From Mustelus asterias (lineage: Eukaryota), in NCBI RefSeq assembly GCF_964213995.1, contig NW_027590388.1, positions 310,001 to 374,000 on the forward strand: a DNA stretch of 64,000 bases, read 5' to 3'. The notes beneath the pieces are model-generated. The model saw only the letters and a list, made by a program, of their open reading frames with translations. It searched no databases and was not told the origin of the DNA. Shown here one piece after another: positions 29,517 through 64,000 of the stretch (position 1 is its first letter; each line of letters opens with the position of its first letter). Made by a program: the position numbers and the translations under genes.

Positions 29517-29561
29517 TGTTAGGAATGGTCCCCACATTACCCACACACCGACCAGCCACAT
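29517..29561 (-). other. Putative leader exon of V segment B (phase-incompatible as read)
   Basis: MWLVGVWVMWGPFLT then GTAATT: 45 nt (phase 0), whereas the V exon needs phase 1. Confidence 0.55.
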
Positions 29562-36075: not shown

Positions 36076-36579
36076 AGATTTTGAATGAGGCCCGCGGGAG
36101 CCTCATTCACTGTGGCTCTCAGTGCACAGTAATACTCGGCGCTGTCTGTCACCTTCTAATCTTTCATGGACAAGTGAAAAGTGCTTTGTTTCAGGTTGAG
36201 ATTCCCGCTGAAGTGTTCAAAGCCTGGAGCCGTATCGGTAAATGAGCGGCTCTGAGCAGTTAATGAGGAGTTCGGTGTGTGTACTGGCGATACCAGAACA
36301 GGTAATGTTGTATAGCTGTACTCGGTACCGAGTAACTGCAGGGTATTGCTGAATCTTCACCCTCTGCTGCTTCAACTCCTGGTTCTGACTGGGACACTGA
36401 GTCACCGTCACTCATGTCTGAAAATAGACGACAGACCCGCAGCGGGTTAGAAGGAGTAACAACAACGGAATAATCACCTCGAGATAGAAATGGGGAATGA
36501 ATATGGTGACTGGCGGATTTCACGCAGAAGTTCAAAATGACAGACCTGTAATCAGAGTAAGAAAGAGTTTCGCCCCCAT
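36076..36579 (-). pseudogene. TCR alpha/delta-type V segment D (paralogue of A): leader 36579-36546, V exon 36417-36115, 23-RSS 36114-36076
   Basis: Leader MGAKLFLTLIT+G|GT; DSVSQSEPGVEAAEGEDSAIPCSY...WYRQ; TAA plus a net 7-nt deletion near CDR2; heptamer CACAGTG, nonamer decayed (TCAAAATCT). Confidence 0.9.
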
Positions 36580-40318: not shown

Positions 40319-41289
40319 TTTATTTTTACAGCCAAACACATTCTGGATGTGTCCGTATCATGTTTAAAGTTTATTTATTAGAGTCACAAAAGTAGGATTA
40401 CGTTAATACTGCAATGAAGTTACTGTGAAAATCCCCTAGTCGCCACACTCCGCCACCTGTTCGGGGACACTAAGGGAGAAATTTAGCATGGCAATACACC
40501 GAACCAGCACGTATTTCGGACTGTGGGAGGAAACTGGAGCAAATCCACACAGACACGGGAAGAACGTGCAAACTCCACACAGAACCAAGCCAGGAATCGA
40601 ACCCGGGTCCCTGGCGCTGTGAGGCAGCAGTGTGCCACTGTGCCACCGTGCCACCCCGTGTGAGGTCGGTGTAGGTAAGACAGATTCCCCACCCATTCTC
40701 GAGGTTGTCAGATCGGATGTTCGGGACAACTCAAGGAAACTGCTTCAGGTATAGGTGATTCATTCTCCTCTGTTATATTCCACACTCTGTGGAAAGTTGT
40801 GGAGTTAATGTAGTTATATTAGATATGATTCCGAAATAGTGAGGAGATGCTTCATCCGATTAAAGTCGTTTTGCAAATTTGATATGAAATCAATTGCTTA
40901 AATAAATATATGTTTACATTGAAAACTATATTGGGAAGCTATATCCAATACTTCATGCCATCGAGTCAGGGAAACGTTGTTACTTAAAGCAAACTGTACA
41001 AGGATTCCACAGAAACTCCTTCTTCAAATGGGGATTGGACAATGACTTGAAAGGGAGAAAAATCAGCTTCATGGAATGAGAGGAGGAAATTGAAATGAGA
41101 ACAAAGAACAGTGCAGCACAGGAACAGGCCCTTCGGCCCACCAAGCCCGCACCGACACGTCAGTTTGGTAGCTCGTCATAAAATAATTGGCATAGGCATG
41201 GTGGGTCGAAGGGCCTCTTATTGTTCTTTGCCATTGCCAACCATTTTCAATCATTACAACAATCTGAGGTCCCTATCTGCTTCAGGAAG

Positions 41290-43548
41290 TGGAGATAGTG
41301 ACCACAATTCGGTGTCTTTTGTTATTGCAATGGAGAGGGATAGGGCCGTACGGCAGGGCAAGGTTTACAATTGGGGGAGAGGTAATTATGATGCGATTAG
41401 GCAAGAATTAGGGGGCATAAGTTGGGAACAGAAACTGTCAGGGAAAGGAACTAATGAAAAATGGAACTTTTTCAAGGAACAAATACTGGGTGTCCTTGAT
41501 AGGTATGTCCCTGTCAGGCAGGGAGGAAATGGCCGAGTGAGGGAACCATGGTTCACGAAAGAGGTGGAATGTCTTGTGAAAAGGAAGAGGGAAGCTTATG
41601 TAGGGATGAGGAAACAAGGTTCAGATGGCTCGATTGAGGGTTACAAGTTAGCAAGGAATGGGCTGAAAAAGGGGCTTAGGAGAACTAGGAGGGGACACGA
41701 GAAGTCCTTGGCGGGTCGGATCAAGGAAAACCCCAAGGTTTTTTACACTTATGTGAGGAATAAAAGAATGACCTTGGTGAGGTTAGGGCCGGTCAAGGAC
41801 AGTAGTGGGAACTTGTGTATGGAGTCAGTAGAGATAGGGGAGGTGATGAATGAATACTTTTCTTCAGTGTTCACCAAGGAGAGGGGCCATGTCTTTGAGG
41901 AAGAGAAGGTGTTCCAGGCTAATAGGCTGGAGGAAATAGATATTCGGAGGGAGGATGTCCTGGCAGTTTTGAATAAACTGAAGGTCGATAAGTCCCCTGG
42001 GCCTGATGAAATGTATCCTAGGATTCTTTGGGAGGCAAGGGATGAGATTGCAGAGCCTTTGGCTTTGATCTTTGGGTCCTCGCTGTCCACGGGGATAGTG
42101 CCAGAGGACTGGAGAATGGGGAATGTTGTTCCTCTGTTTAAGAAAGGGAATAGAAATGACCCTGGTAATTATAGACTGGTTAGTCTTACTTCGGTGGTTG
42201 GTAAATTGATGGAAAAGGTCCTTAGGGATGGGATTTACGACCATTTAGAAAGATGCGGATTAATCCGGGATACTCAGCATGGATTCGTGAAGGGCAAGTC
42301 GTGCCTCACAAATTTGATTGAATTTTTTGAGGAGGTAACTAAGTGTGTTGATGAAGGTAGGGCAGTTGATGTCATATACATGGATTTTAGTAAGGCATTT
42401 GATAAGGTTCCCCATGGTCGGCTTATGATGAAAGTGAGGAGGTGTGGGATAGAGGGAAAGTTGGCCGATTGGATAGGTAACTGGCTGTCTGATCGAAGAC
42501 AGAGGGTGGTGGTGGATGGAAAATTTTCGGATTGGAGGCAGGTTGCGAGCGGAGTGCCTCAGGGATCAGTGCTTGGTCCTCTGCTCTTTGTAATTTTTTA
42601 TTAATGACTTAGAGGAGGGGGCTGAAGGGTGGATCAGTAAATTTGCTGATGACACCAAGATTGGTGGAGTAGTGGATGAGGTGGAGGGCTGTTGTAGGCT
42701 GCAAAGAGACATAGATAGGATGCAAAGCTGGGCTGAAAAATGGCAAATGGAGTTTAACCCTGATAAATGTGAGGTGATTCATTTTGGTAGGACTAATTTA
42801 AATGTGGATTACAGGGTCAAAGGTAAGGTTCTGAAGACTGTGGAGGAACAGAGAGATCTTGGGGTCCATATCCACAAATCTCTTAAGGTTGCCACTGAAG
42901 TGGATAGAGCTGTGAAGAAGGCCTATAGTGTGTTAGCTTTTATTAACAGGGGGTTGGAGTTTAAGAGCCGTGGGGTTATGCTGCAACTGTACAGGACCTT
43001 GGTGAGACCACATTTGGAATATCGTGTGCAGTTCTGGTCACCTCACTATAAGAAGGATGTGGAAGCGCTGGAAAGAGTGCAGAGGAGATTTACCAGGATG
43101 CTGCCTGGTTTGGAGGGTAGGTCCTATGAGGAAAGGTTGAGGGAGCTGGGGCTGTTCTTTTTGGAGCGGAGGAGGCTGAGGGGAGACTTAATAGAGGTTT
43201 ATAAAATGATGAAGGGGATAGATAGAGTGAACGTTCAAAGACTATTTCCTCGGGTGGATGGAGCTATTACAAGGGGGCATAACTATAGGGTTTTTGGTGG
43301 GAGATATAGGAAGGATATCAGAGGTAGGTTCTTTATGCAGAGAGTGGTTGGGGTGTGGAATGGACTGCCTGCAGTGATAGTGGAGTCAGACACTTTAGGA
43401 ACATTTAAGCGGTTATTGGATAGGCACATGGAGCACACCAGGATGATAGGGAGTGGGATAGCTTGACCTTGGTTTCAGATAAAGCTCGGCACAACATCGT
43501 GGGCCGAAGGGCCTGTTCTGTGCTGTATCGTTCTATGTTCTATGTTCT
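41290..43548 (+). mobile_element. CR1/HER1 LINE, 5'-truncated and relatively young (one frameshift near 42595)
   Basis: Long RT ORFs 41111-42604 and 42672-43466; (TGTTCTA)n tail. Confidence 0.93.
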
Positions 43549-48149: not shown

Positions 48150-48705
48150 ATCTTTACTGAGTTACAGACTGGATTCGAATTGATGGGTTCAGGATGGTCT
48201 ACACATAGAATAACAAATAACTGGGAGTGAGTTACAGACCGGAATCCAAGCAATGAATCTAAGCAGAGGGTTTATATATAGGATAAGATACCCGGGAGTG
48301 TGTTACAGACTAGAATCTAATCAAGGGTTTGGTGTGGTTTATATATGGAATAACAGATACTTGGAAATGAGTTCCAAACTGCAATCCAATCTCGGGGTTT
48401 GGGGTGGTTTATCTATAGAATAACAGATACCCATAAGTGAGTTAAAGACTGGGGTCCAATCGAGGATTTTGGAGTGGTTTACATAAAATGACAGATACCT
48501 GGGAGTGAGTGACAGAGTAGAATCTAATTGAAAGGTTCATGGTGGTTTATGTACAGAATAACAGATACCTGGGAGCGTCATAAACTAGAATCTAATCGAG
48601 GGTTTCTGGTGGTTTATAGAACAACAGATACCCGGGAGTGAGTTACAAACTGGAATATAATCAAAGGTTTTCGAGTGGCTTAAATGTAGAATACGCTGGG
48701 AGTGA
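48150..48705 (+). repeat. Diverged ~69-bp tandem repeat (about 8 units)
   Basis: GGGAGTGAGTTACAGACTGGAATCTAATCGAG...TGGTTTATATAGAATAACAGATAC recurring. Confidence 0.85.
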
Positions 48706-48744
48706 ATTTGTACCTGTCTCACTTCCCAAATCTATCTTGTTGCC

Positions 48745-49235
48745 TTACAATGTTGTCTTAAGTGTCACCTCCTCTGCTTCTGCTGAATATGTTACTGCAC
48801 TTTGACCATCAGGTCCCTGTCCGCTGAGGAGTTGGTAGTCAGCATCTTTTGGTCGTTTCTTCAGGCTTGTGTATGTTGAATCTTGTACTGGAACCATCTG
48901 GGGAGTGTTAGGCTTAGTCTCATCCTGCCTTTGGAGGCTTGCAGCAGGCCCAGCCTCGGCCTGCTCTCTTATTGAGCCTGAGCTCGGCCCAGACTCGGCC
49001 TGAATTCTGAGGCTTGCAGCAGGCCCAGCCTCGGCCTGCTCGCTTAGTGAGCCTGCACTAGGCCCAACCTTATCCAGCCTTCTGAGGCCTGCAGCAGGCC
49101 CAGCCTCGACCTCCACTGTCAGTTGCGAAGACCGCTTTGGCCTGCCCTGCACCCGTTGGCCAGTGGCCTGGGCTTGCTCCTTGGTGTCAGGTTGAGTTCC
49201 AGGACTTAGCAAATCAGAGTAAATTCCTTCTTCTC
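48745..49235 (-). CDS. Ig-superfamily receptor, terminal cytoplasmic exon (25-aa repeats, ITAM)
   Basis: CTCTTTGCAG acceptor; EEGIYSDL...DSTYTSLKKRPKDADYQLL...VTYSAE...stop; phase 1. Confidence 0.8.
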
Positions 49236-49611
49236 CTGCAAAGAGGAAAGATCAATTTCAGTGGAAAAAGAAACCTAGGAACAAGGAGCAGTTGGATGCA
49301 GTGAGCTTGGTTCTCGTCCTGTGGCACGATTATGCTGATCCTATCAACTCTATTCTCCACTCCACTCCCCGTTCTCTTTTAGAAAATGCCCGAAAATCTC
49401 TCAAACTCTGTCTTGAATCTACTCAATGAATGATCATCTACCGCTCTCTGGGTTAGAGAATTTCAAAGACTTACCACTCTGACTGAAAAGCCTGAAATTT
49501 GATCCCTTACCCTGAAACCGTGACCCCCATATTCCGGACTCCGCAACCGGGGGAGACATCCGGTAAGCATGTTGCACTTGAAACTGTGAGAGATCTGTAT
49601 ACGTTTCAAAC

Positions 49612-50416
49612 AGATGGACTTCAACCCGGATAAGTGTGTGGTGATCCATTTTGGGATGAAGCAGCAATATAATATGAAGGGTACCATTCTTAGCAGTGTA
49701 GAGGATCAGAAGGACCTTGGGGTCCGGGTCCATAGGACTCTTAAATCGGCCTCGCAGGTGGAGGATGCGGTCAAGAAGGCGTACGGCGTACTGGCCTTCA
49801 TTAATCGAGGGATTGAGTTTAGGAGTCGGGAGATAATGCTGCAGCTTTATAGGACCCTGGTAGACCCCACTTGGAGTACTGCGCGCAGTTCTGGTCACCT
49901 CATTACAGGAAAGATGTTGAAGCCATTGAAAGGGTGCAGAGGAGATTTACAAGGATGTTGCCTGGATTGGGGGGCATGCCTTATGAGGATAGGTTGAGGG
50001 AGCTTGGTCTCTTCTCCCTGGAGAGACGAAGGATGAGAGGTGACCTGATAGAGGTTTACAAGATGTTGAGAGGTCTGGATAGGGTAGACTCTCAGAGGCT
50101 ATTTCCAAGGGCTGAAATGGTTGCTACGAGAGGACACAGGTTTAAGGTGCTGGCGGGGGGGGGGGGGGTAGGTACAGAGGAGATGTCAGGGGTAAGTTTT
50201 TCACTCAGAGGGTGGTGGGTGAGTGGAATCGGCTGACGTCGGTGGTGGTGGAGGCAAACTCGTTGGGGTCTTTTAAGAGACTTCTGGATGAGTACATGGG
50301 ATTTAATGGGATTGAGGGCTATAGATAGGCCTAGAGGTGGGGATGTGATCGGCGCAACCTGTGGGCCGAAGGGCCTGTTTGTGCTGTGGCTTTCTATGTT
50401 CTATGTTCTATGTTCT
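49612..50416 (+). mobile_element. CR1 LINE 3' end (intronic)
   Basis: RT C-terminal motifs and (TGTTCTA)n tail. Confidence 0.9.
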
Positions 50417-50809
50417 ATCACCTCTCACACTATTTGCTTCCAGAATACTAATCTCACATCAGCCAATATCCCTCAGCCCAGGAGTCAGTAGCAAAATGAT
50501 TTTCTCTGTATCGCTCGAATATGAGTTAATTCGGTAAGGAGACCAAAACTGTTCGCAGTATTCCAGCTGTGACAGTACCAACGTAGCTCTAACAAGAATA
50601 CCTCACTCTAATACACCAAATGCTTGTGTAAAAGAGGCAAACATGGGTTTCGAGCTGATTCCTGTGCCCGCCTGTTTGACAAATCTCCAGGCAAGGGAGA
50701 TCGGGAGGCAGATTGACACAGAGACAGTCTGAGCATCTCCAAAATGATAAAATTACACTCAGTAATGTTTACAAATAAAAAATTCCCTCTTACACTGCCC
50801 CACAACCAA

Positions 50810-51640
50810 ACATTCCGAACAGGTACAGCACGAGGTTAGGGACGGAATACATCTCCGTGTACATAGTTCCCATCAAACACTCCCAGGACAGGTACCGCAC
50901 AAGGTTAGATACAAAGTAAAACTCCCTCCACACTGTCCTCATCAAACGCTCCCAGAACAGGTAGAGCACAGAGTAAGATACAGAGTAAAACTTGCTCTAC
51001 ACTGTCTCCATCAAACACTCCCAGGCCAGGTATAGCACAGGGTTAGATACAGTGTGAAGCTCCTTCGAGACTGTCCCCATCAAAAACTCCCAGGACAGGT
51101 ACCGGACGGGGTTACATACAGAGTAAAACTCCCTCTACACTATCCCCATCAAACACTCCTCGGACAGGTAAAGCACAGGGCTCGATACAAAGTAAACCTT
51201 CATCGATACTGTCCCCCATCAAACACTTCCAGGACAGGTACAGCTCAGGATTAGATACAGAGTACAACTTCCTCCACACTATCCCCCATCAAACATTCCC
51301 AGGACAGGTACAGCACGGTGTCAGATACAGAGTAAAGCTCCCTCTACACTGTCCCCATCAAACACTCCCAGGACAGGTACAGCACGGGGTTAGATACAGA
51401 GTAAAGCTCGCTGTACACTGTCCCCATCAAACACTCCCAGGACAGGTACAGCACGGTGTTAGATACAGAGTAAAGCTCCCTCTGCACTGTCCCCATCAAA
51501 CACTCCCAGGATAGGTACAGCACGGGGTTATATACAGAGTAAAGCTGCCTCTACACTGTCCCCATCAAACACTCCCAGGACAGGTACAGCACGGTGTTAG
51601 ATACAGAGTAAAACTCCCTCTACACTGTCCCCATCAAACA
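50810..51640 (+). repeat. 69-bp minisatellite, about 12 units (intronic)
   Basis: CCCCATCAAACACTCCCAGGACAGGTACAGCACGGGGTTAGATACAGAGTAAAGCTCCCTCTACACTGT. Confidence 0.95.
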
Positions 51641-51753
51641 ATCACCGTTGTACCGGCGGAAAACTGCTGACCTCCTCGTACCCACAGTAATGGACAGCAG
51701 TTTGTTAGGCAGAGTCAGACAGTTTTGGCGTACACGCTGGATTGAACCCCTAC

Positions 51754-51786
51754 CTTGGTTTTGTCTCCTTTTCTTTTCATTTTTAC
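51754..51786 (-). CDS. Ig-superfamily receptor, 33-nt basic juxtamembrane exon
   Basis: Polypyrimidine-TCTAG|GTAAAAATGAAAAGAAAAGGAGACAAAACCAAG|GTAGGG; KNEKKRRQNQ; phase 1-1. Confidence 0.7.
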
Positions 51787-51904
51787 CTAGACATAAGAGG
51801 CAAAATAAGAGAAAGTCAGTATCAGATGATATTGAGTCTCTGTTATCACTCCCTCCCTCTCCCCACTCTCTCCCTCTGCTGCCACCCTCCATCCCTCTCC
51901 GACT

Positions 51905-52160
51905 AAAACCCCAGTTCCAGTGCGAGATTCCCTCTTTGCCGCACAGCACCAGTGCGAGATCTCCTGTCTCTCACAGCCCAGTGTGACATCCCCTGTCCCT
52001 CACACCCCCAGTGCGAAATCTCCTCTCTCTCACACCCCCAGTGTGAGATCCCCTGTCTCTCGCACTCCCAGTGTGAGATCCCCTGTCTCTCAAACCCTCG
52101 TGCGAGGTCCCCTGTCACTCATACCCCCAGTGCGAGATCCACGACCTCTCACACTCAATG
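51905..52160 (+). repeat. ~30-bp minisatellite, about 8 units
   Basis: CCCAGTGCGAGATCCCCTGTCTCTCACACC-like units. Confidence 0.85.
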
Positions 52161-52226
52161 TTCGGGAAGCATTCTGGGATTAAGAGGAGATTGTTTGCTG
52201 CTATGAGAACAGACCCAACACTTAAC

Positions 52227-52337
52227 TGCTCTGCTGATGGCACAGATAGAAGGTGATCAGCAAAGCCGCCGTATAAACTGCCAAGAAAATTGCAGTAAGA
52301 ATAATCTTCACTTTCTGGTACTGAACTGAGGAAACAT
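52227..52337 (-). CDS. Ig-superfamily receptor, transmembrane exon
   Basis: TTTACAG| DVSSVQYQKVKIILTAIFLAVYTAALLITFYLCHQQS |GTTAAG; 111 nt, phase 1-1; the donor is weak. Confidence 0.8.
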
Positions 52338-52791
52338 CTGTAAATAGAACAATATGGAGAAAGAGAGTCGTTCAATAGCAAATGACAACAGCAGGACATT
52401 CTCTCACATGCAGTGTGTGTGCGCTTGTGTGTCTCCGTACATTTGTGTGTGTTCATATGTGTCGCGTGTGTGCAGCCTTCTTGAAACGCTGCAGTCCTCG
52501 TGCTGTGTGATCCACAATGCCATCGTGATTGTTAACATTGAGTGTCTCGCTGGGCTATTTCTGACAGCAGCTGAGAGTCAACCACATTGCTGTTTTTCGA
52601 TTCACAGGTGGACCAGTCAGGGTAAGGACTGCAGTTTTTCTTCCCTAAAGGACAGTAGTGAACCCAACCATTTCCAAAAATGGTTTCATGCCACCAGCAG
52701 ATTCTTAAATCCAGATTTTTGTTATTGAATACAAATACCACTGTCTGTGAGTGCGTGTGTGCGTGAGTGTATGTATGTGTGTGCACATAAG

Positions 52792-52922
52792 NNNNNNNNN
52801 NNNNNNNNNNNNNNNNNNNNNNNNNNNNNNNNNNNNNNNNNNNNNNNNNNNNNNNNNNNNNNNNNNNNNNNNNNNNNNNNNNNNNNNNNNNNNNNNNNNN
52901 NNNNNNNNNNNNNNNNNNNNNN
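52792..52922. other. Assembly gap within TG-rich microsatellite
   Basis: Run of N. Confidence 0.99.
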
Positions 52923-53219
52923 TGTTTGTGTGCATGAGTATGTGTGTATGAATGAAAAAAAAAATCACACTCCTGATGTTGTGCCTCCTAGATGGTGGAC
53001 AGATTGTGGGGAGTTAGGAAGCGAGTTAATTGACACAAGACTGCCTCATAGTGTCTGAGCAGTATCCTTCCTTATATCATGACGCAGAATATATTACAGT
53101 GACAGTGGTAGAATTGATCATCAACCCGCAGGTTAGGGGGGGATTCAGTGTTGGTAACGTCACTGAATGGCAAGGATTTGTTCATGCATTTGAGATGTAG
53201 TAAAACGATAGGTTGTTAC

Positions 53220-53519
53220 CTGGTTGAATTCTGATATTGTTGCTGTAGCCACAAGTTTCTCCCAAATCAACAGTCTGCTCGACTCCTGCTGCAGCTTCCT
53301 TGCATTTATAAACCGTTTCTCCAAGCTGGGAATCGAGTGTGACATCCAAAATCATCCCACCAAACTTCAGCTCATGCCTCTGATCACTGATAACCTTCTT
53401 GTTCCCTCTGAACCACTCAACAGCCGAGTCACGCAAGCTGGAACACATCAGTTCCACTTTGCATGTCCCACTGCTGGGCTGCTTTCTCTCGAGGCAAATC
53501 TGCAGCTCCCCAGCAGTAC
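53220..53519 (-). CDS. Ig-superfamily receptor, SLAM/CD2-like C2 Ig domain exon
   Basis: 300-nt phase 1-1 exon (CTAG|...CCAG|GTAACA): GTCKVELMC...VEWFR...VYKC...GETC, the 4-Cys layout of SLAM/CD2 membrane-proximal domains, plus one extra Cys. Confidence 0.8.
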
Positions 53520-54079
53520 CTAGTGTGAAAAAGAGATTCGTAACTCGAGCAGCTGGCTGCAAGCAAAGATCTATTTTTATTCTCTCACAAGGTGTGGGTG
53601 TCGCAGGCTGGAACAGCATTTATTGACCATCTCTAATTGGTCTTGAGAAGGTGGTGGTGAGCTGCCTTCTTGAACCGCGTCAGTCCCCGTGATGTAGGTA
53701 TGCCCACAGTGCTGCTCGAAAGGGTGTTTCAGGATTTTGACACAGCGACAGTGAAGGAACAGTGATATATTTCCAAGTCAGGATGCTGAGTGACTTGGAG
53801 GGGAACCTCCAGGTGGTGGTCTTTCTGCTACTCTTCTAGATGGTAGAGGTCGTGCAATTGAAGCGTGCTGTCGAAGGAATCTCAGTGAGTTCCTGCAGTG
53901 CATCGCGTAGAGGCTACTCATGGCTGCCACTGTGCGTCAGTGGTGGAAGGAGTGAATGTTATTGGAAGGGCTGCTTTATCTTTGGCCGTGTAGAGCTTCA
54001 TGGGTGTTGATGGAGCTGCACATACCAAGGCAAGAGCAGACTATTCCATCATACTCCTGACTTGTGCCTGATGGTGGGT

Positions 54080-57000
54080 CTGTCTTCACAACGGAAGACA
54101 TGAATAATGTACCAAAAGCTCTGAGAGAAACAAGTTTTAATGAAGTGCTGAAGGAAATCAGTATTTATAGCGAAATGGTTTGGGGGAAAATAATGGGATT
54201 GAACAAAGAACAAAGAAAATTACAACACAGGAATAGGCCCTTCGGCCGTCCAAGCCTGCACCGACCATGCTGCCCGACTGAACTAAAGCCCCCTATCCTT
54301 CTGGGAACCTTATCGCTGTATTCCCATCTTATTCATGTATTTGGCAAGATGCCCCTTAAAAGTCACTATCGTATCTGCTTCCACTGCCTTCCCCAGCAGC
54401 GAGTTCCAGGCACCCACCACCCTCTGTGCAAAGCACGTGCCTCATACATCGCCTTTAAACCTTGCCCCTCGCAACTTAAACCTATGCCCCCGAGTAATTG
54501 ACTCTTCTACTGTGGGAAAATAGCGTCTGACTATCCATTCTGTCCCCCTTCATGATCTTGTAGAGGTTGATCAGTTCGCCCGCTCAACGTTTGTCGTTCC
54601 AGCGAGAACAAACTAAGATTCTCCAACCTCTGCTCACAGCTAATGTCCTGCATACCAGGCAACATCCTGGTTAAAGGGTGGCAGGTAAGAAGATTGGATA
54701 GGATAGGATAGGATAGGATAAAGACAGCAAAGAATGACAAAAAGATTAATAAAGAGGGAGAATGAGAGAAAGTTATCGAGGAATATGAGAAATTGAAATG
54801 TAGTATATAATGTAACAATTTCCACAGATACTTAAAAAAGAAAAGTCAACAAAGTGAGCATTGGTCCTATAGAAAGTATGTCTGGGGAGTTGAAAAAAAA
54901 CAATAAGGAGATAGTAGATGAACTGAACCAGTATTATAAAAAAAGGTTGGTGGCACGGTGGTTAGCATTGCTGCCTCATAGCGCCAGGGACTCGGGTTCA
55001 ATTTTGGCCTCGGGTAACTGTCTGTTTGGAGTTTGCACGTTCTCCCCATGTCTGCATGGGTTTTCTCCGGATGTTCCGTTTCCTCCCACAGTCCAAAGAT
55101 GTGCGGGTTATATTGATTGGCAATGGTAAATTGACACTCTGGTCAGGGGACTTAGCAAGGTTAATATGAAGGATGAGGGGAATAGGGTCTGGGTGGGATT
55201 GTGGTCGGTGGCAGACTTGATGCTCTCAATGGCTTCCTTCTGCACTGCAGGCATTCTATTCTATGAAATTTCTTCTGCACCCTCTCCAAAACCTCCACAT
55301 CCTTCTGGTAGCGTGAAGACCAGAATTGAACACGATATTCCAAGTGCAGCCGAACTAAGGTTCTATAAAGATGCAACATGACTTGACAATTTTTAAACTC
55401 AATGCCCCGGCCGATGAAGGCAAGCATGCTGTATGCATTCTTGACTACCTTATATGAAACTACAGCACAAAACAGGCCGTTCGGCCCCACAAGTTGTGCC
55501 GAACATATCCCTACCTTCTAGGCCTACCTATAACCCTCCATCCTATTAAGTCCCATGTACTCATCCAGGAGTCTCTTAAAAGACCCTATTGAGTTTGCCT
55601 CCACCACCACTGACGGCAGCCGATTTCACTCGTCCACCACCCTCTGTGTGAAAAGGTTCCCCCTAACATTTCCCCTGTACCTACCCCCCAGCACCTTAAA
55701 CCTGTGTCCTCTCGTAGCAGAGATTTCCACCCTGAGAAAAAGCCTCTGAGAGTCCACTCGATCTATGCCTCTCAACATCTTATACACCTCTATTAGGTCT
55801 CCTCTCATCCTACGTCTCTCCAAGGAGAAAAGACCGAGCTCCCTCAGCCTATCCTCATAAGGCATGCCAGTCAATCCAGGCAACATCCTTCTAAATCTCC
55901 TCTGCACCCGTTCAATCTTTTCCACATCCTTCCTATAATGAGGCGACCAGAACAGAGCACAGTACTCCAAGTGTGGACTGACGAGGGTCTTATATAGCTG
56001 CATCATTATCCCCGGACTCCTAAACTCAATCCCTCGATTGATAAAGGCCAGCACACCATACGCCTTCTTAACCACCTCCTCCACCTCTGGGGCCAATTTT
56101 AGAGTCCTATGGACCCGGACCCCAAGGTCCTTCTGATCCTCTACAGTACGAAGAGTCTTTACCTTTATATTGTACTCCTTCATCCCATTTGACCTGCCAA
56201 AATGGACCACTACGCATTTATCTGGGTAGAAGTCCATCTGCCACTTCTCCACCCAGTCTTGCATCCTATCTATGTCCCTCTGTAACTTCTGACATCCGTC
56301 CAGACTATCCACAACCCCACCAAACTTCGTGTCGTCGGCAAACTGACCAACCCATCCCTCCACGTCCTCATCCAGGTCATTTATGAAAATGACAAACAGC
56401 AAGGGTCCCAGAACAGATCCCTGGGGCACACCACTGGTGACCGACCTCTATTTAGAAAAATCTGTACCCACTCTCTGCCTCCTCTGGGCAAGCCAGTTCT
56501 GGATCCACAGGGCAGCAGCCCCTTGGATCCCATGCCCTCTCACTTTTTCTAGAACCCTTGCATGGGGGACCTTATCGAACGCCTTGCTAAGATCCATATA
56601 AACCACATCTACCGCTTTCCCTTCGTCACTGTGTTTAGTCACATTTTTCAAGAACTCCACCAGGCTCGTAAGGCACGATCTGCCTTTGACAAAGCCATGC
56701 TGAGTATTCTTGAGCATACTAAACCTCTCTAAATGCTCATAAATCTTGTCCCACAGGATCTTCTCCATCAGCCTACCAACCACTGAGGTTAGACTCACCA
56801 GTCGGTAATTTCCTGGGCTATCCTTAATCCCCTTCTTGAAAATAGGAACCACATCCGCAATCCTCCAATTCTCCGGCACCTCTCCCGTCTCCATCGACCT
56901 TCTCCACCTGCGTTGCCACTTTCAGTGACTTGGATATCTGCACACCCAGATCCCTCTGCCTGTCAATATTCTTAAGGGTTCTGCCATTTACTGTATATTT

Positions 57001-59900
57001 CCCATCTATATTAGACTTCCAAAATGCATTACCTCACATTTGTCCATTAAACTCCATCTGCCATCTCTCCGCCCAAATCTCGAACCATTCTATATCCTGC
57101 TGTATCCTCTGACAGTCGTCACTGCGATCCACAATTCCTCCAATTTTTGCATCGTCTGCAGACTTACTAATCAAACCAGTTACATTTCCCTCCAAATCAT
57201 TTATATATATTACAAGCATCAAAAGTCCCAGCATTGATCCCTGAAGAACGCCACTTGTCACAGCCCTCCATTCAGAAACGCACCCTTCCATTACTACCCT
57301 CTGTCTTCTATGACCGAGGCAGTTCTGCATCCATCTTGCCAGCTGATCTCTGATCCCGTGCGACTTAACCTTCTGTACCAGTCTGCCATGAGGGACCTTG
57401 TCAAAGGCCTTACTGAAGTCCATGTAGACAACATGCACTGCCCTACCCTCATCAATCATCTTCGCCACTTCCTCGAAAAACTCGATTAGCTAAGTGAGAC
57501 ACGACCTCCCTATCACAAAACCATGTTGTGACTCACTAATACGTCCACTTATTTTCAAGTGGGAGTAAATCCTGTCTCGAAGAATGCTCTCCAATAATTT
57601 CCCCACCATTGGCTGAAGGCTCACCGGCCTTTAATTACCTGGTTTATCCTTACTACCCTTCATAAACAAAGGAACAACGTTATCCAATCTTCTGGGACCT
57701 CCACTGTACTAGTGAGGATACAAAGATTTCTCTCAAGTCCTGAGCAGTTTCCTGCCTTGCATCTCTCAGTATTCTGGGGTGTTTCCCATCAGGCCCCGTG
57801 GACTCGTCTAATTTAGTGCTTTTCAAGAACCCAATATTACCTCCTTTTTGGTCTCATCATGACCCAAACTATCTACACACACTTCCCCAGACTCATCATT
57901 AAGCAAGTCCTCCTCTTTTGTGAAAACTGACGCAAAGTATTCATTTAATACCGCGCTCATTTCCTCTTTTCCTCCAGCTCCATGCATAGATCCCCTCCCC
58001 TGTCCTCCTCCAGGTTCCTTGCTTTCTCTTCATATATGCATAAAAAGGATTTTCCTTAATCTTGCTGGCCAATTACTTTTTGTTACCCCTTTTAGCCCTC
58101 CTTACTCCTTGCTTGAGCTTCTTTCTACTTTTCTTGTATTCCACTTCTCCTTCGTGTGTTCCCATTCTCCTAGCCTTGACAAATGCTTCCTTTTTCTCCA
58201 GCCAAAAGAGAACATGCTGGAAAATCTCAGCAGGTCTGGCCGCATCTGTAAGGAGAGAAAAGAGCTGATGTTTCGACTCCAGATGACCCTTTGTCAAAGC
58301 TAAAAGACATAGAAAGTCAAAGATATTTATAGTGCAGGGTGAGGAAATGAAACATGAGTCATCGCCACAGGAACCATGAGCTTCCTTTTTTCTCTTTGAC
58401 TAGGCTCACAATATCTCTCACTATCCAAGTTTGCTGAAACTTGCCACAATTACCCTTCAGCCTCATAGGAATGTGCCAGTCCTGAATTCCTACCAACTTG
58501 CAGTTGAAAACCTCCACATGTCAGAAATTGATTTGCCCTCAAATATCTGCCCCAATCTATATTCTTCAATTCCTGCCTAATAATGTTGTAATTCGCCTTC
58601 CCCTAATTTAGCACCTTCACTTGAGGACTACACTTATCTTTATCCATCAGTACCTTGAAGCTTACTGAATTGTGGTCACTGTTCCCAAACTGCTCTCCTC
58701 CTGAAACGTCGTCACCTGGCCAGGCTCATTCCCCAATAACAGGTCCAGTATGGCTCCTTCCCGAGTTGGACTATCGACATAATAGTTCAAGACATCCTCC
58801 TGGATGTGCCTTACAAACTCTGCCCCATCCACGTCGCGAGCACTAAGTAGTCCCAGTCATTTTGGGGAAGTTAATATCTCCCTCCACAGCAACCCTGTTA
58901 CTTTTGCACCTTGCCAAAATCCGCCTATATATCTGTTCCTCTGTCGCTGGCTTTTAGGGGGACTACAGTAAACCCCCAGCGTTGTGACTACACCCTTCCT
59001 ATTCCTGAGCTCTACCCATGTTGCCTCGCTGTATGAGTTCTCTGAGGTGTCCTCCCACAATACATTTGTGATATTCTCCAGTAGTGTAACTCCCCCAACC
59101 CTTTTAGATCCCCCTCTATCCCACTGAAAACATCTGTATCCTGGAACGTAAAGCTGCCAATCCTGTCCTTCCCTTAGCCAAGTCTCTAATGGCAACAACA
59201 TCATAATTCCAAGTATTAATCCAAGCCCTAAGTTCTTACCTGTTACACTTCCCGCATTGAAACAAATGTACATCAGTCCACCAGAACCTCTTTGATGAGC
59301 AACCACACTCTGCCTGCTCTTTCTCTGAATTTTACTGGACCTACTCTCCAGTCCTCCTTAAGTGGGCGGCATGGTGGCACAGTGGTTAGCACCGCTGCTT
59401 CCCAGCGTGATGGACCAGGGTTCGATTGCCTTCTTGGGTTACTGTCTGTGTGGAGTGTGCACGTCCTCCCCATGTCTGCGTGGGTTCCTTCAGGGTGTTC
59501 CGGTTTCCTCCCACAGTCTGAAAGACGTGCTGGTTAGGTGCATTGATCCGAACAAGTGCCAAGTGCGGTGACTAGGGGAATTTCACCGTCACTTAATTGC
59601 AGTGTTAATGTAAGCCTTATTTATGACTAATAAATGAACTATTACTTTAAGTTAATTCACCTTTGCTTTGGTTCCTATCCCCTGCCAAAGTACTTTAAAT
59701 CCTCCCGTGTGATACTAGCAAACCTCCCGGTCAGAATATTAATGCCCCTCCAGTTTAGATACAAGCCGTCCTTGTACAGATCCCACCTGTCCCGTAAGAG
59801 ATCCCAGTGGTCCAGATATCTAAACCCTTCCCCGTACACCAGTTGTTGAGCCACATGTTGAGCTGTACTACCTTCCAATTTCTCGCCTCACTGGTACATA
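54080..59900 (-). mobile_element. Nested CR1 LINE fragments (RT, APE, ORF1 esterase-like) with SINE insertions
   Basis: RT ORFs 55626-56894 and 57034-57468; endonuclease-like 58857-59306; GFRYLDHW...DGLYLN at 59675-59878; HE1 copies at 54948-55265 and 59365-59630. Confidence 0.85.
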
Positions 59901-59904
59901 GCGC

Positions 59905-60975
59905 AGGGTCACTGTCTGTGTGGAGTTTGCACATACTCCTCGTGTCTGCGTGGGTTTCCTCCGGGCGCTCCGGTTTCCTCCCACAGTCCAAAGATGTGCG
60001 GGTTAGGTTGATTGGCCAGGTTAAAAATTGTCCCTTAGAGTCCTGGGATGCGTAGGTTAGAGGGATTAGCGGGTAAAATATGTGGGGGTAGGGCCTGGGT
60101 GGGATTGTGGTCGGTGCAGACTCGATGGGCCGAATGGCCTCCGACTGCACTGTAGGGTTTCTATGTCTTCTATCTAGGTAATAATCCTGAGATTACAATC
60201 CTAGAGGTCCTGCTTTTTAACATTCTATCTAACTTCCTAAACTGCTGCAGGATCTCATCACTCTTTCTAAAATGGTCTCTGGGGCCTTATAATCTTCATC
60301 TCAGAGTACATAACGGAACAGCCCTAGAGGGGGGTGGCACGGTGGCACAGTGGTCAGCTCTGTTGCCTCAAAGCTCGAGCTTTAATTCCAGCCTCGATCA
60401 CTGTCTGTTTAGAGTTTACACGTTCTCCCCGTGTCTGCGTGGGTTTCCTCCGGGTGCCCCGGTTTCCTCCTACAGTCCAAAGTTACAGAGTTAAAGGTTC
60501 CAACAGTGCAGAAGGAGGCCATTCGGCCCATCAAGTCTGCAAGGAACGCAATCCCACCCAGGCTCTATCCCCGTAACCCCATGTATTTAACCAAGCTAGT
60601 CCCTCTGACACTATGGGGCACTTTAGCATGGCCAATCCACCTAACCCACACATGCTTGGAATGTGGGAGGAAATCGGAGCACCTGGAGGAAATCCACGCA
60701 GACACGGGGAGAACGTGCAGACTCCGCACAGACAGTAACCCAAGCCAGGAATCGAACCCAGATCCCTGGCGATGTGAGGCAGCTGTGCTAACCACTGTGC
60801 CACCGTGCCGCCTGCAGATTAGGTTTATTGGCCATACTAAATTGACCCGAGTGTCAGGGGATTGGCAGGGTAAATATGTGGGGTCATGGGAATAGGGTCT
60901 GGGTGGCATTGTGGTCGGTGCAAACTCGATCGGCCAAACGGCTTCTTTCAGAACTGTATGAATTCTGTGATTCTA
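59905..60975. mobile_element. Cluster of nested HE1-type SINEs
   Basis: Copies in both orientations; one reverse copy is nested in a forward copy at 60335-60970. Confidence 0.85.
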
Positions 60976-61009
60976 TGAAATAGGGACACATTTGGTGTCA
61001 TTTTCCAGT

Positions 61010-62265
61010 TCTTTGGTCTCTGGACTGGTTCCTGCAGATTGGAGGGTAGATAATGTAAGCCCGCGATTCAGAAAATGGGGTAGAGAGAACAGGGTACTAT
61101 GGACCAATGAACCTGACATCAGTATTGGCGAAGGAGCTGGAGTCCGTTTATCAAGTATTTCAAAACTCAGCAGTTGGAAAACAGTGGTATAATCAGGCAA
61201 TGCCAGCATCTATTTACAAAGGAGAAATCATGCTTGGTGAATCTATTGGAATTATTTGAGAATGTAACCATTCGAGGAGAACTAGAGAAGGTGGTTTATT
61301 TGGACTTTCAGAAGGCTTTTAACAAGTTAGTGTTTTGAGATAGATAGAGAGCTGATTAGCAGGCAGGAAACAGAGTTAGCATAAATGGGTCTTTTTTCGA
61401 TTGGCAAGCAGTGACTCGTGGACTACTGCAGGGATCGGTGTTGGGATCCCAACTGTTCACATAAAAGATTGATGATTCGGAAGAGGGAACGAAATGTACT
61501 AGCTCCAAGTTTGCAGATGACAAATTATGGTGGGAGGGTGAGCTGTGAGGGGGATGCAGGGATTCTTTAATCTGATTTGGACAGGCTGAATGAGTGCGCA
61601 TACGCATGGCAGATGCAGTACAACGTGGACAAATGTGAGATTATCCACTTTGGTGGCAATAATAGGAAGACAGATTATTGTTTGAATGGTTGTAAACTGA
61701 GAGAGGTGGATTCTCACCGAGACCTTGGTGACCTCGTGCATCAGTTGCCGAAAGTAAACACTGAGGCACTTAGCAGGCAGTAAAGAAGGCAAATAGTATG
61801 TTGGACTTCATAGCGAGAGATAAGAGTGTCGGAATAGGGATGTTTTATTGCAATTGTGTCGGGTGTTGGTGAGGCCACACTTGGAGTACTGTGTGCAGTT
61901 TTGGTGTCCGTATCTGAGGAAGGGTGTCCTTGCTATAGGAGGCAAGCACCAAAGGGTTACCAGGCTCATTCCTGGAGTGGCAGGTCCGTCATGTGAGGAG
62001 AGACTAAATCAGTTACGCTTATATTCACTGGGGTTTAGAAGAGTGAGAGGGGATCTCATAGGAATTATTAAATGGCGGGGGAGTCCAGAATTAGGTGTCG
62101 TACTTTGAGGATAAGGGATGAACTGATTAAGACTGAGGTGATTAAAAATGTCTTCACCCAGAGAGTGGTGAATCTGTGGAATTCAATGTGACAGCAAGGA
62201 GTTAAGTCCAAAACGTTGTGTGATTTCAAGTTATTAGATATAGCTCAAGGGATCAAGGGATATGC
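61010..62265 (+). mobile_element. Old CR1 LINE RT fragment
   Basis: KFADD and RPHLEYCVQFW motifs. Confidence 0.8.
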
Positions 62266-62569
62266 GGGGGGTTGGGGGGGGCGGGTGAGGTGGTGGGGGG
62301 ATGGTTGAGGGAGGGGGTGATCAGTTTCTGAGTATCTGACTGAGAAGATGAGTGGTTATGCTGTAGCAATGAGAGGCAAACATAAGAAATATTTCTAAAA
62401 TCAACAAATGAGACGCCATCAAATCTGAATTTCAAATTGAGCCTGAGGGTTTTTAAAGTCTTAATCAAAGGGATTTCAGGAAAAGGTGAGCAGATGATGT
62501 TTGATCTCAAAGTAGACAAGATCATGTTGAAAAGCTCAACAGTTTTGTACTGCCTGTCCTCAACTGCCT

Positions 62570-63165
62570 CACACTCAGACCCTTCCTCACACTCACACAC
62601 ACCCCTCTCACCCTCCTTCATACACCCTCTACTATATAAGCACCCTCCATCACAAGCTCACCACCTCCCCCTCACATTATCTCCCTCACACCCCCCCACC
62701 CCTTCTCCCTCACCCCCTCTCCTTATGCACCCTCACTTATACCGTCACCCGCCCTCACAATCACACCCACCTTCGCACCCTGTCCTGCTTATACCTTCTC
62801 CTTCCCTCACATCCTTTCCTTCACACCTGCTTCCTCATGTGTATTCTCCTTCATACTCACCCCCTCTGCCACACTCTCCCCTTCCCTCTCCCTCACACAC
62901 TCTCCCTCACACTCACACCATCCTTCAGGCTCACCGTTCCTCTCGCTCAGTCACATTCACTCACGCTGGTGCTCACTCACAACTCACACCTTTTCCCTCT
63001 CATACCTTCTCCCACCCTCTCATCCTTTCCTGCACACTCGCCCTCCTCCGCACTTATGCCATCCCACGCCCTCATCCCCTCTCCCCCACACTCACCCTCT
63101 TCCCGCACTCTCGCCCCCTGCCCTCACACGCCCTCACCCCCTTCCTCATCCTACCACTCCGCACT
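62570..63165 (+). repeat. C/T/A-rich low-complexity tract
   Basis: CCCTCAC/CTCACAC-like motifs with few G. Confidence 0.85.
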
Positions 63166-63171
63166 CTCGAG

Positions 63172-64000
63172 TCATAGAAACCCTACAGTGCAGAAGGAGG
63201 CCATTCGGCCCATCGAGTCTGCACCGACCACAATCCCACCCAGGCTCTACCCCCACATATTTACCCGCTAATCACTCTAACTACACATCTCAGGGACAAT
63301 TTTTAACCTGGCCAATCAACCTAACCCACACATCTTTGGACTGTGGGAGGAAACCGGAGCATCCGGAGGAAACCCACGCAGACACGAGGAGAATGTGCAA
63401 ACTCCACACAGACAGTGACCCGAGCCGGGAATCGAACCCGGGACCCTGGAGCTGTGAAGCAGCAGTGCTAACCACTGTGCTACCGTGCTGCCCAAGTCAT
63501 AGAGCTTTATAGCATGGAAACAGGCCCTTCTGCCCAACTAGTCCCTGCCACCCTTTTTTTTAACCACTAAGCTAGTCCCAATTACCTGCATTTGGCCCAT
63601 ATCCCTGTCGACCCATCTTACCCATGTAGCTGTCTGAACGCTTTTTAAAAGACAAAATTGTACCCGTCTCTATTACTATCTTTGGCAGCTTGTTCCAGAC
63701 ACTCACCACCCTCTGTGAAAAACTTGCCCCTCTCGACAAATTTGTATCTCTCCCCTCTCACCTTAAACCTATGCCCTCTAGTTTTCCCCTACCTCTGGGA
63801 AAATATGTTGATTAGCTAACTGATCTATGGCCCTCATTATCTTATAGACCTCTATTCTCACCCCTAGGTCCTCCTAAGTCTCCTGCTCTCCAGGGAAAAA
63901 TGTCCCAGCCTATCCAGCCTCTCCTTATAACTCAAACCATTAAGTCCTGGTAACATCCTAATAAATTATTTCTACATTCTTTCTAGTTTAATAATCTTCT
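63172..64000 (-). mobile_element. HE1 SINE (63172-63495) followed by a CR1 3' end
   Basis: Reverse SINE head at 63460-63494; downstream sequence homologous to 22560-23040. Confidence 0.85.

What the first reader, a model, noticed from the sequence alone, without database searches (positions are those of the whole stretch)
48745..53519. SLAM/CD2-like Ig receptor with its own ITAM, hidden across four small exons
Seen: exons 53519-53220 (Ig C2), 52337-52227 (TM), 51786-51754 (basic) and 49235-48745 (tail) all have AG/GT boundaries and phase-1 junctions, and splice into a stop-free ~310-aa partial protein. The tail has D-S-T-YTSL-KKRPKDAD-YQLL (48882-48826), an exact D/ExxYxxL-x8-YxxL ITAM, plus GIYSDL and VTYSAE tyrosines; the TM has no charged residue. 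Known: SLAM-family receptors signal through ITSMs (TxYxxV/I) and SAP/EAT-2, CD2 through proline-rich motifs, and ligand-binding receptors with their own ITAM (FcgRIIa, CEACAM3) are uncommon. Inference: a shark activating receptor joining a SLAM/CD2-type ectodomain to direct Syk/ZAP70 signalling, with no ITSM.
Basis: partly seen in the sequence, partly recalled or inferred. Interest (0 to 1): 0.85.

Follow-up and report, generated by a model that had tools for sequence, protein, structure and literature searches.

The report
Shark single-Ig membrane protein with ITAM
This is a real, transcribed shark gene for a small surface protein with one SLAM/CD2-type constant Ig domain and a conserved activating (ITAM) signalling tail, from a shark-and-ray family that databases list only as uncharacterized.

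Summary
All four minus-strand exons are open, AG/GT-bounded and phase 1. The N gap lies in the intron between the Ig and TM exons. Spliced contigs from two runs show all three predicted junctions. The four exons match RefSeq XP_078060885.1, "uncharacterized protein LOC144486731" of Mustelus asterias, at 307 of 307 residues. The gene is therefore annotated, not hidden; only the leader exon lies outside the window.

The Ig domain's nearest relatives outside its own family are C2 domains of shark CD2/SLAM-like proteins. The ITAM is present in 5 of 6 shark and ray genera, and no member has an ITSM. However, every full-length homologue is signal peptide + one Ig + TM + tail. There is no V domain, so this is not a SLAM/CD2-type ectodomain. 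A conserved Lys sits at the outer edge of the TM.

The family was found only in elasmobranchs, with at least 9 loci in Mustelus, 3 of them without the ITAM. In this window the gene sits beside TCR alpha/delta-like V segments. My paper searches found no description of it. Syk/ZAP-70 signalling is inferred, not shown. Four other first-reader notes report the same kind of gene elsewhere in this genome.

The parts
53220..53519 (-). Ig exon: last 4 residues of the signal peptide plus one C2-like Ig domain (G20-P119). Cysteines are C28, C39, C45, C92 and C109.
   Evidence: 99 of 99 residues identical to P0041. AF2 model is a 7-strand sandwich, pLDDT 82. Spliced contigs end and start exactly at 53220.
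52792..52922 (.). Assembly gap (131 N) inside intron 1. Not coding and not filled.
   Evidence: The joint 53220|52337 in spliced contigs skips it.
52227..52337 (-). Stalk plus transmembrane exon (D120-S157). The hydrophobic core is I131-C152.
   Evidence: 36 of 36 residues identical to P0041. AF2 helix spans residues 122-167. L138, L145, T148 and C152 are invariant across 12 aligned sequences.
52306..52308 (-). Conserved Lys (K130) at the outer edge of the TM core.
   Evidence: Its role is inferred.
51754..51786 (-). Basic 33-nt mini-exon (S157-G168, KNEKKRRQNQ). It is skipped in some isoforms.
   Evidence: Both of its junctions lie in one spliced contig. Isoforms without it are P0033 and P0004.
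48745..49235 (-). Cytoplasmic tail exon including stop TAA 48747-48745. The tail is predicted to be disordered.
   Evidence: 162 of 162 residues identical to P0041. pLDDT is below 50.
49210..49233 (-). Membrane-proximal acidic YxxL motif, EEGIYSDL (Y173).
   Evidence: I172 and Y173 are nearly invariant and S174 invariant in 12 sequences.
48934..49112 (-). 75-nt (25-aa) EAGPAASLR-type tandem repeat, 2.4 copies. Copy number varies between paralogues.
   Evidence: TRF. P0031 carries one extra unit.
48826..48882 (-). ITAM: D-S-T-YTSL-x8-YQLL (Y289, Y301).
   Evidence: Y289 and Y301 are nearly invariant, L292 and L304 invariant.
48781..48795 (-). C-terminal VTYSA motif (Y317).
   Evidence: V315, T316 and A319 are nearly invariant and S318 invariant.
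48608..48744 (-). Start of the 3' UTR, covered by RNA-like contigs.
   Evidence: X1 records 1-3 lie on 48608-48846.

Best explanation
The locus is one copy (RefSeq LOC144486731, Mustelus asterias) of a multigene family found only in elasmobranchs. It encodes a 330-aa type I membrane protein.

Architecture:
- A signal peptide, whose exon lies beyond the window.
- One Ig domain descended from the membrane-proximal C2 domain of CD2/SLAM-type receptors. There is no V domain.
- A short stalk and a well-conserved TM helix with a Lys at its outer edge.
- A disordered tail carrying an acidic YSDL motif, a variable EAGP repeat spacer, a canonical ITAM and a C-terminal TYSA motif.

Shown:
- The exon structure and its splicing.
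- Identity with the annotated protein.
- The single-Ig architecture.
- The relation of the Ig domain to shark SLAM-like C2 domains.
- Conservation of the tyrosine motifs from sharks to rays.

Inferred:
- On leukocytes the protein is clustered, probably as a disulfide-linked dimer, because 5 of 6 genera have an odd number of ectodomain cysteines.
- Src-family kinases then phosphorylate Y289 and Y301.
- The doubly phosphorylated ITAM recruits the tandem SH2 domains of Syk/ZAP-70 and gives an activating signal without SAP/EAT-2.
- Whether the lone Ig domain binds a ligand itself or docks onto another chain is open.
For: - Exons and frames.
- Junctions: all three (53220|52337, 52227|51786, 51754|49235) lie in single spliced contigs of X1 (organism A, 472 nt) and X4 (organism B, 948 nt). 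X1 covers exons but not unique intron bins, which looks like mRNA.
- Identity: 307 of 307 exon residues match P0041.
- Family range: Scyliorhinus (2 species), Heterodontus, Stegostoma, Rhincodon, Mobula (2 species), Narcine and Mustelus.
- Architecture: single-Ig in all models with an N-terminus.
- SLAM-like C2 relation. The shark SLAM-like group itself hits SLAMF6, CD2 and CD48 structures at E 1e-12 to 1e-13.
- ITAM: present in 12 of 17 tails and 5 of 6 genera. The chance rate in shuffles is 0.16%. The manta protein hits Pfam ITAM PF02189 at E 3.8e-4, 21.2 bits against a cut-off of 22.2.
- Motif columns are among the few conserved tail columns between sharks and rays.
Against: - There is no direct evidence of phosphorylation, Syk binding, the expressing cell type or the tissue. 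Run identities are coded.
- The spliced contigs differ from the window by 2-5%. For example, the first 6 nt of the mini-exon differ. They come from a close paralogue or another species, so expression of this exact copy is not shown.
- Heterodontus has D in place of the second ITAM Tyr, in 2 of 2 models.
- 3 of 9 Mustelus loci (P0036, P0037, P0038) end before the ITAM.
- A lone C2 domain has no obvious ligand-binding face.
- Direct profile search of the PDB does not reach SLAM/CD2. Structure search ties NCAM2, MDGA1, CEACAM and NTB-A at Z 9.1-9.6. The SLAM link therefore rests on shark intermediates.
Confidence: 0.65

Rival explanations
1. It is an obligate signalling subunit built like CD79 or CD3: one small Ig domain, a TM and an ITAM. 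It would pair, through its unpaired cysteine and TM contacts, with a separate ligand-binding chain instead of sensing ligand itself.
For: - There is no V domain.
- The ectodomain cysteine count is odd in 5 of 6 genera. A stalk Cys just above the membrane is present in Heterodontus, Stegostoma, Mobula and Narcine (sequences).
- The TM is as conserved as the Ig core: L138, L145, T148 and C152 are invariant and the Lys is conserved.
- The tail profile weakly touches the CD3 gamma ITAM (E 1.3-1.8, not significant).
- The Ig exon weakly hits Pfam Ig_4 (CD3 delta) at E 0.009, below the cut-off.
Against: - Known signalling subunits carry an acidic, not a basic, TM residue and are single-copy. This family has at least 9 loci in one species, some ITAM-less.
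- No partner is known.
- There is no significant sequence relation to CD3 or CD79.
Confidence: 0.3
2. One reading: a two-domain (V + C2) SLAM/CD2-type receptor whose V and leader exons lie beyond the window.
For: - The X4 spliced contig extends 464 nt upstream of the Ig exon, onto sequence not in the laid stretch. That is long enough for a V exon.
- No V-like open frame was seen on the minus strand at 53520-64000, so upstream exons are outside the window in either case.
Against: - 19 of 19 homologue models with an N-terminus have signal peptide directly followed by this Ig domain.
- The window's Ig exon starts with the signal-peptide end TAG|ELQ.
- The S. torazame model shows a long in-frame 5' leader of non-Ig sequence (107 residues) ahead of the start Met, which can account for a long 5' UTR.
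- No V-set hit in the 5 models scanned.
Confidence: 0.05
3. The tyrosine motifs do not drive activation. They would act as inhibitory ITAM (ITAMi), ITIM-like or YxxPhi sorting signals, or this copy is a silent duplicate on its way to becoming a pseudogene.
For: - The first ITAM Tyr sits in S-x-Y-x-x-L, which also fits the ITIM consensus, in Mustelus and Scyliorhinus.
- 3 of 9 Mustelus loci are truncated before the ITAM. A 1-nt deletion variant at 48984 is seen in reads of X2-X4.
- The spliced contigs are not identical to this copy.
Against: - The ITIM-like context is not conserved: Stegostoma has PVYTSL and M. birostris has PTYQPL.
- Both tyrosines and both leucines, with x7-8 spacing, are kept from sharks to rays.
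- This copy has an intact frame across all four exons.
- Exact-match exon-4 contigs occur in the RNA-like run X4 (records 26 and 28).
Confidence: 0.1

Closest known systems
CD2/SLAM family receptors (SLAMF1-9, CD2, CD48, CD58), and their shark relatives that NCBI names 'SLAM family member 5-like', 'Ly-9-like' and 'HEPACAM family member 2-like'
   Same: - The Ig domain aligns to their membrane-proximal C2 domain (hhalign probability 96.6%, E 5e-10, 63 columns; phmmer 18-26 bits per domain).
- It shares the C-x5-C ... YxC ... C cysteine pattern visible.
- The ESM Atlas nearest clusters are named SLAMF7 and SLAMF8 (0.94 and 0.93).
- All exons are phase 1.
   Different: - No N-terminal V domain.
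- No ITSM (0 of 17 tails).
- It has an ITAM instead.
- In this window it lies among TCR V segments.
- There is no direct significant hit to solved SLAM or CD2 structures.
CD3 gamma/delta/epsilon and CD79a/b (single-Ig, ITAM-bearing signalling subunits)
   Same: - Same architecture: signal peptide, one small Ig domain, stalk, TM, and a disordered tail with ITAM.
- The manta ITAM, YQPL-x7-YNTL, is of the ordinary canonical type.
   Different: - No significant sequence relation: Pfam Ig_4 E 0.009, below cut-off; CD3 gamma E 1.3 or worse.
- The TM has a basic, not an acidic, residue.
- No CxxC stalk motif (recalled feature of CD3).
- The tail is much longer.
- The family is multi-copy.
Receptors with their own ITAM: Fc gamma RIIA, CEACAM3, CEACAM4, CEACAM19 and CEACAM20
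   Same: - An Ig-superfamily type I protein carrying the ITAM on the same chain.
- CEACAM C2-type domains are among the tied best structural matches (CEACAM1 domain 2 Z 9.3, CEACAM5 Z 9.2).
- The shark SLAM-like profile also hits CEA and CEACAM1.
   Different: - Those receptors have ligand-binding N-terminal domains.
- No CEACAM or Fc receptor appears among the 18 of 22 significant sequence hits whose source names were looked up.
- The extra A'-G disulfide pattern is a CD2/SLAM feature, not a CEACAM one (recalled).
Xenopus expanded CD2/SLAM family with NxxR-type TMs (Guselnikov et al. 2011, as cited in PMC4536121)
   Same: It is a precedent for a non-mammalian CD2/SLAM-derived family diversified towards ITAM-type activation. 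I saw this only as passages of PMC4536121.
   Different: - Those receptors are said to use an NxxR TM motif, a feature of receptors that borrow ITAMs from Fc receptor gamma.
- Here there is no NxxR motif and the ITAM is on the chain itself.
- I did not read the 2011 paper.

Membership tests
CD2/SLAM family | Membrane-proximal C2-set Ig domain homologous to the family's C2 domain, with two disulfides | tested here: met
   - hhalign A2 against A4: probability 96.6%, E 5e-10.
- Per-domain phmmer: 18-26 bits.
- The cysteine pattern C39-x5-C45 ... C92-x16-C109 parallels GIC-x5-C ... YKC-x18-C of shark SLAM-like proteins.
- The shark group itself hits SLAMF6, CD2 and CD48.
- The disulfide pairing is inferred.
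CD2/SLAM family | N-terminal V-set domain that mediates homophilic or heterophilic binding | tested here: not met
   - 19 of 19 homologue models with an N-terminus lack it.
- No V-set Pfam hit in the 5 models scanned.
- The signal-peptide end is encoded in the Ig exon.
SLAM subfamily | Cytoplasmic ITSM, T-x-Y-x-x-V/I, that binds SAP/EAT-2 | tested here: not met
   0 of 17 family tails contain T.Y..[VI].
ITAM-bearing proteins | Y-x-x-L/I, then 6-8 residues, then Y-x-x-L/I in a cytoplasmic tail, with an upstream acidic residue | tested here: met
   - Window: DSTYTSL-x8-YQLL at 48882-48826.
- 12 of 17 tails and 5 of 6 genera.
- Pfam PF02189: 21.2 bits against a cut-off of 22.2 in Mobula.
ITAM-bearing proteins | Phosphorylation-dependent binding of Syk/ZAP-70 tandem SH2 domains | not testable with these tools
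   Needs biochemistry.
CD3/CD79-type signalling subunits | Sequence homology of the Ig domain to CD3 or CD79 | tested here: not met
   - Pfam Ig_4 E 0.009, 17 bits against a cut-off of 30.1.
- PDB profile search: CD3 gamma only at E 1.3 or worse, and only over the ITAM.
- VIA: CD79b at Z 8.2, tied with many unrelated Ig domains.
CD3/CD79-type signalling subunits | Acidic or polar TM residue used to assemble with a basic-TM receptor chain | tested here: not met
   The TM has no Asp or Glu. It has a conserved Lys at the outer edge instead.
Rearranging antigen-receptor constant region | J segments with RSS upstream of the C exon | tested here: not met
   - No J-like heptamer plus FGxG frame near the gene. 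The only such match in the window, at 47505, lies downstream of the gene and has no nonamer.
- Homologues have their own leader exon.

The most novel reading that the evidence does not exclude
The family is a previously unrecognised ITAM signalling module of cartilaginous fish. It would be a CD79/CD3-like one-Ig-domain subunit that arose independently from a CD2/SLAM C2 domain. It has been co-amplified with TCR alpha/delta V segments and works with a T- or NK-cell receptor complex that has no counterpart in bony vertebrates.
Probability: 0.12. Interest if true: 0.85.

Novelty: new variant of a known kind. Interest (0 to 1): 0.6.

Why it matters
ITAM signalling chains are few and ancient: CD3, CD79, Fc receptor gamma, DAP12 and zeta. 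Receptors that carry their own ITAM are uncommon.

This family has a V-less, SLAM/CD2-derived Ig domain joined to a canonical ITAM, and the motif is kept from sharks to rays. It would add a lineage-specific way of coupling an Ig-superfamily chain to Syk-family kinases in the oldest living jawed vertebrates. It would also show that CD2/SLAM-type domains were recruited to ITAM signalling independently of the ITSM/SAP route.

Its repeated placement beside TCR V segments in Mustelus gives a concrete locus to test. The question is whether immune-receptor arrays carry passenger signalling genes when they amplify.

The family currently has only 'uncharacterized protein LOC...' names. My searches of open papers found none that mentions these loci.

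Tried and rejected
- V or leader exon in the window: no V-like or leader-like open frame on the minus strand between 53520 and 64000. tblastn with P0032 residues 1-19 found nothing. The 5' exon is outside the window.
- Rearranging-receptor idea: no J/RSS near the gene. Rejected.
- CD3 or CD79 membership: only sub-threshold hits. Rejected.
- Pre-T-alpha-like idea: considered from memory because of the single C-like domain, the basic TM residue and the TCR locus. It was dropped because no search returned PTCRA and the Ig domain relates to SLAM-like C2 domains.
- Structure searches: Foldseek gave only generic I-set matches, best E 7.8e-4 and TM 0.41-0.60. VIA-wide tied NCAM2, MDGA1, CEACAM and NTB-A at Z 9.1-9.6. 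The fold confirms an Ig C2/I-type sandwich but cannot assign a family.
- PDB profile search with the family reached only myomesin (E 0.005) and VEGFR2 D7 (E 0.07).
- Pfam on the window's tail and TM exons: no hits.
Whether the TCR-V neighbourhood holds outside Mustelus is therefore untested.
- The search of earlier findings by place and by sequence returned nothing.
- Domain tree (25 rows): it separates the family (18 rows, 100/100) from shark SLAM-like C2 domains (7 rows) and groups the 9 Mustelus copies (80/87). With only two groups it cannot place the family among Ig families. Rows left out were the isoforms P0001, P0004, P0009 and P0033, the near-identical P0027 and P0029, and SLAM-like domains scoring under 14 bits.
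- Supplementary files of papers were closed and not consulted. They might list these loci in expression tables.

Full report
**1. Observation**

Reading the minus strand and translating each exon on its own confirms the four exons at the stated coordinates.
- The exons are 53519-53220, 52337-52227, 51786-51754 and 49235-48745.
- Each has AG before it. The first three have GT after them, and the tail exon ends in a stop (TAA 48747-48745). All junctions are phase 1.
- The ITAM D-S-T-YTSL-x8-YQLL occupies 48882-48826.
- The only assembly gap in the window, 52792-52922, lies inside the intron between the Ig and TM exons.
- That gap is flanked by CA-rich simple sequence, does not touch coding sequence, and was not filled.

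**2. Transcription and splicing**

One 601-base stretch of the tail exon was used to find runs. Four runs were then laid on 48600-53600.
- X2 and X3 cover exons and introns evenly, like genomic DNA.
- X1 (organism A, study P1) covers the exons and repeats but has zero depth in the unique intron bins, like mRNA.
- X4 (organism B, study P2) is exon-enriched.
- A single contig in X1 (472 nt, depth 199) and one in X4 (948 nt, depth 15.5) carry all three joints: 53220|52337, 52227|51786 and 51754|49235.
- The two joints at the mini-exon have a 'side' of only 27. That is unavoidable for a 33-nt exon whose first six letters differ in these contigs.
- The contigs differ from the window by 4-7 letters per exon, so they come from a close paralogue or a related species. 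The splicing pattern is shown for the family, not strictly for this copy.
- The X4 contig continues 464 nt upstream of the Ig exon, onto sequence outside the laid stretch.

**3. Identity of the gene**

An exhaustive HMMER search with the Ig exon gave 22 proteins at E 0.001 or better.
- The six best single-domain matches are elasmobranch proteins named only 'uncharacterized protein'.
- They come from Scyliorhinus canicula, Heterodontus francisci, Rhincodon typus, Stegostoma tigrinum, Mobula and Narcine.
- A profile of six of them found 12 proteins, all elasmobranch, including seven Mustelus asterias loci.
- Exon-by-exon comparison shows that XP_078060885.1 (LOC144486731, M. asterias, 330 aa) matches the window at 99/99, 36/36, 10/10 and 162/162 residues.
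- Three further 330-aa loci differ by 1-6 residues.

The window is therefore M. asterias or something indistinguishable from it. Residues 1-19 (the leader exon) are not in the window. Counting cluster members, Mustelus has at least 9 loci.

**4. Architecture**

Every homologue model with an N-terminus runs signal peptide, one Ig domain, stalk, TM, tail.
- None has a V domain, and Pfam finds no V-set in the five models scanned.
- The window's Ig exon begins with the signal-peptide end (TAG|ELQ), as in the manta and Narcine proteins.
- The S. torazame model has 107 non-Ig residues of in-frame upstream sequence before the start Met. This suggests a long 5' UTR, which can explain the 464 extra letters of the X4 contig.
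- AlphaFold2 gives a seven-strand Ig sandwich for the exon (pLDDT 82).
- For the full-length database protein it gives Ig plus one long helix (residues 122-167) plus a disordered tail.

**5. What the Ig domain is related to**

Pfam recognises it only weakly.
- The window's exon hits Ig_4 at E 0.009.
- Homologues hit I-set and Ig_2, also below cut-off.

Rescoring per domain, the best non-family matches are C2 domains of shark proteins that NCBI calls SLAMF5-like, Ly-9-like or HEPACAM2-like.
- These score 18.4-26.5 bits.
- Titin-, obscurin- and hemicentin-like domains score 11.4 bits or less.
- Profile-profile comparison gives probability 96.6%, E 5.3e-10 over 63 columns of that C2 domain.
- The shark group is itself CD2/SLAM-like: its profile hits SLAMF6 (6e-13), a CD48/CD2 chimera (1e-12), CD2 (4e-12), and also CEA and CEACAM1.
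- The protein-language-model search puts clusters named SLAMF7 and SLAMF8 first, at 0.94 and 0.93. This is a lead only.

Structure searches cannot discriminate between families.
- Foldseek returned only generic I-set matches.
- VIA-wide tied NCAM2 (Z 9.6), CEACAM1 domain 2 (Z 9.3) and NTB-A C2 (Z 9.1, rmsd 2.1).
- A direct profile search of the PDB does not reach SLAM or CD2.

The reading 'CD2/SLAM-type C2 domain' is therefore supported, but only through shark intermediates.

**6. The tail**

In the 12-sequence alignment most of the tail is unalignable between sharks and rays. Three tyrosine motifs stand out:
- EEGIYSDL, next to the membrane.
- The ITAM.
- VTYSA..EEV, at the C-terminus.

The ITAM counts are as follows.
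- The pattern Yxx[LI]-x6-8-Yxx[LI] is present in 12 of the 17 tails the script could delimit (19 proteins were given). By genus it is present in 5 of 6.
- Mantas have two copies: YQTL-x8-YSRL and YQPL-x7-YNTL.
- Narcine keeps only the upstream one (YQDL-x8-YCKI).
- Heterodontus has lost the second Tyr.
- Three Mustelus loci stop before the motif. A matching 1-nt deletion at 48984 is seen in reads.
- No tail has an ITSM.
- The manta protein nearly reaches Pfam's ITAM threshold: 21.2 bits against 22.2.
- Chance gives the motif in 0.16% of shuffles of the tail.

A 75-nt repeat varies in copy number between paralogues. The 33-nt basic exon is skipped in some isoforms, and the frame is kept because all exons are phase 1.

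**7. TM and cysteines**

- The hydrophobic core (I131-C152) has no charge, but K130 at its outer edge is conserved. In rays the equivalent Lys is preceded by hydrophobic residues.
- L138, L145, T148 and C152 are invariant.
- Mature ectodomains have five cysteines in 5 of 6 genera, counted by eye.
- C39 and C109 are invariant. The canonical B-F pair is lost in Stegostoma and Rhincodon.
- A stalk Cys occurs in four genera.
- From this I infer a covalent dimer and possibly intramembrane contacts. Neither is shown.

**8. Surroundings**

- On the same strand, downstream of the gene, lie two V-set segments. Each has CACAGTG, a 23-bp spacer and an A-rich nonamer (heptamers start at 29099 and 20534).
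- One of them resembles TCR alpha/delta V clusters.
- The window also holds four C2H2 zinc-finger open frames and many reverse-transcriptase fragments.
- No J-like element lies near the gene.
- Four other first-reader notes in this genome describe the same kind of gene beside TCR V segments. I could not test those places.

**9. Literature**

- Searches for shark or cartilaginous-fish ITAM and SLAM terms found no description of such a protein.
- A search for six of the LOC identifiers found nothing.
- A search on Xenopodinae, SLAM family and ITAM also found no such description.
- From PMC4536121 I read passages only. They say that expanded Xenopus CD2/SLAM genes include members with NxxR-type TMs, citing Guselnikov et al. 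2011, which I did not read.
- All other papers were seen as search listings only.
- The library covers open-access papers and bioRxiv, and supplements were closed.

**10. Verdict**

- The gene is real, spliced, annotated but uncharacterized.
The V + C2 receptor picture does not.
- The best reading is a V-less, CD2/SLAM-C2-derived, ITAM-bearing surface signalling protein that is specific to elasmobranchs and multi-copy in Mustelus.
- Signalling through Syk/ZAP-70 is the most likely mechanism, but it is inferred.

Noticed in passing
window 29100-29580 (-) and 20535-20767 (-): Two germline V-set gene segments. The 29 kb one has a split leader, and each is followed by a CACAGTG heptamer, a 23-bp spacer and an A-rich nonamer. 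Pfam V-set gives E 2e-14 and 5e-10. The 29 kb one resembles TCR alpha/delta V clusters in the ESM Atlas (0.96).
   Followed up: partly
window 36263-36703 (-): An open frame ending in a leader/V-start-like stretch (DGDSVSQSEPGV). It has no Pfam V-set hit and no RSS was found. It may be a V relic.
   Followed up: partly
window 2-1048 (-), 6084-6803 (-), 10771-11376 (-), 13240-14505 (+): Four C2H2 zinc-finger open frames with up to 12 fingers (zf-C2H2 E 7e-87 for the first). They form a ZNF cluster next to the TCR V segments. The frame at 13.2-14.5 kb is broken across reading frames.
   Followed up: partly
window 50779-51640 and 51917-52154: Intronic tandem arrays inside the gene: a 69-bp unit in 12.4 copies (intron 3) and a 30-bp unit in 7.9 copies (intron 2). 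Both attract very high read depth, so they are genome-wide repeats.
   Followed up: no
window 37956-39473 (-): A 506-aa open frame with a reverse-transcriptase domain and a weak GIY-YIG hit (E 4e-4). This looks like a Penelope-like retroelement. Many other LINE RT fragments occur, for example at 55629-56447, 31253-32605 and 41099-43463.
   Followed up: partly
window 48984 and 48822-48823: Read variants in the tail exon. A 1-nt deletion at 48984 in some contigs of X2-X4 matches the frameshifted, ITAM-less paralogues P0036 and P0037. At 48823, just after YQLL, all four runs read a letter that gives Arg where the window has Ser. Some contigs also differ at 48822, which would turn the next Gly into Arg. 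The other 330-aa paralogues have Arg-Gly at this spot.
   Followed up: partly
Narcine bancroftii P0009 compared with P0035: Isoform X2 of the electric-ray homologue lacks the TM segment but keeps the Ig domain and the ITAM-bearing tail. It may be a TM-less splice form or a faulty gene model.
   Followed up: no
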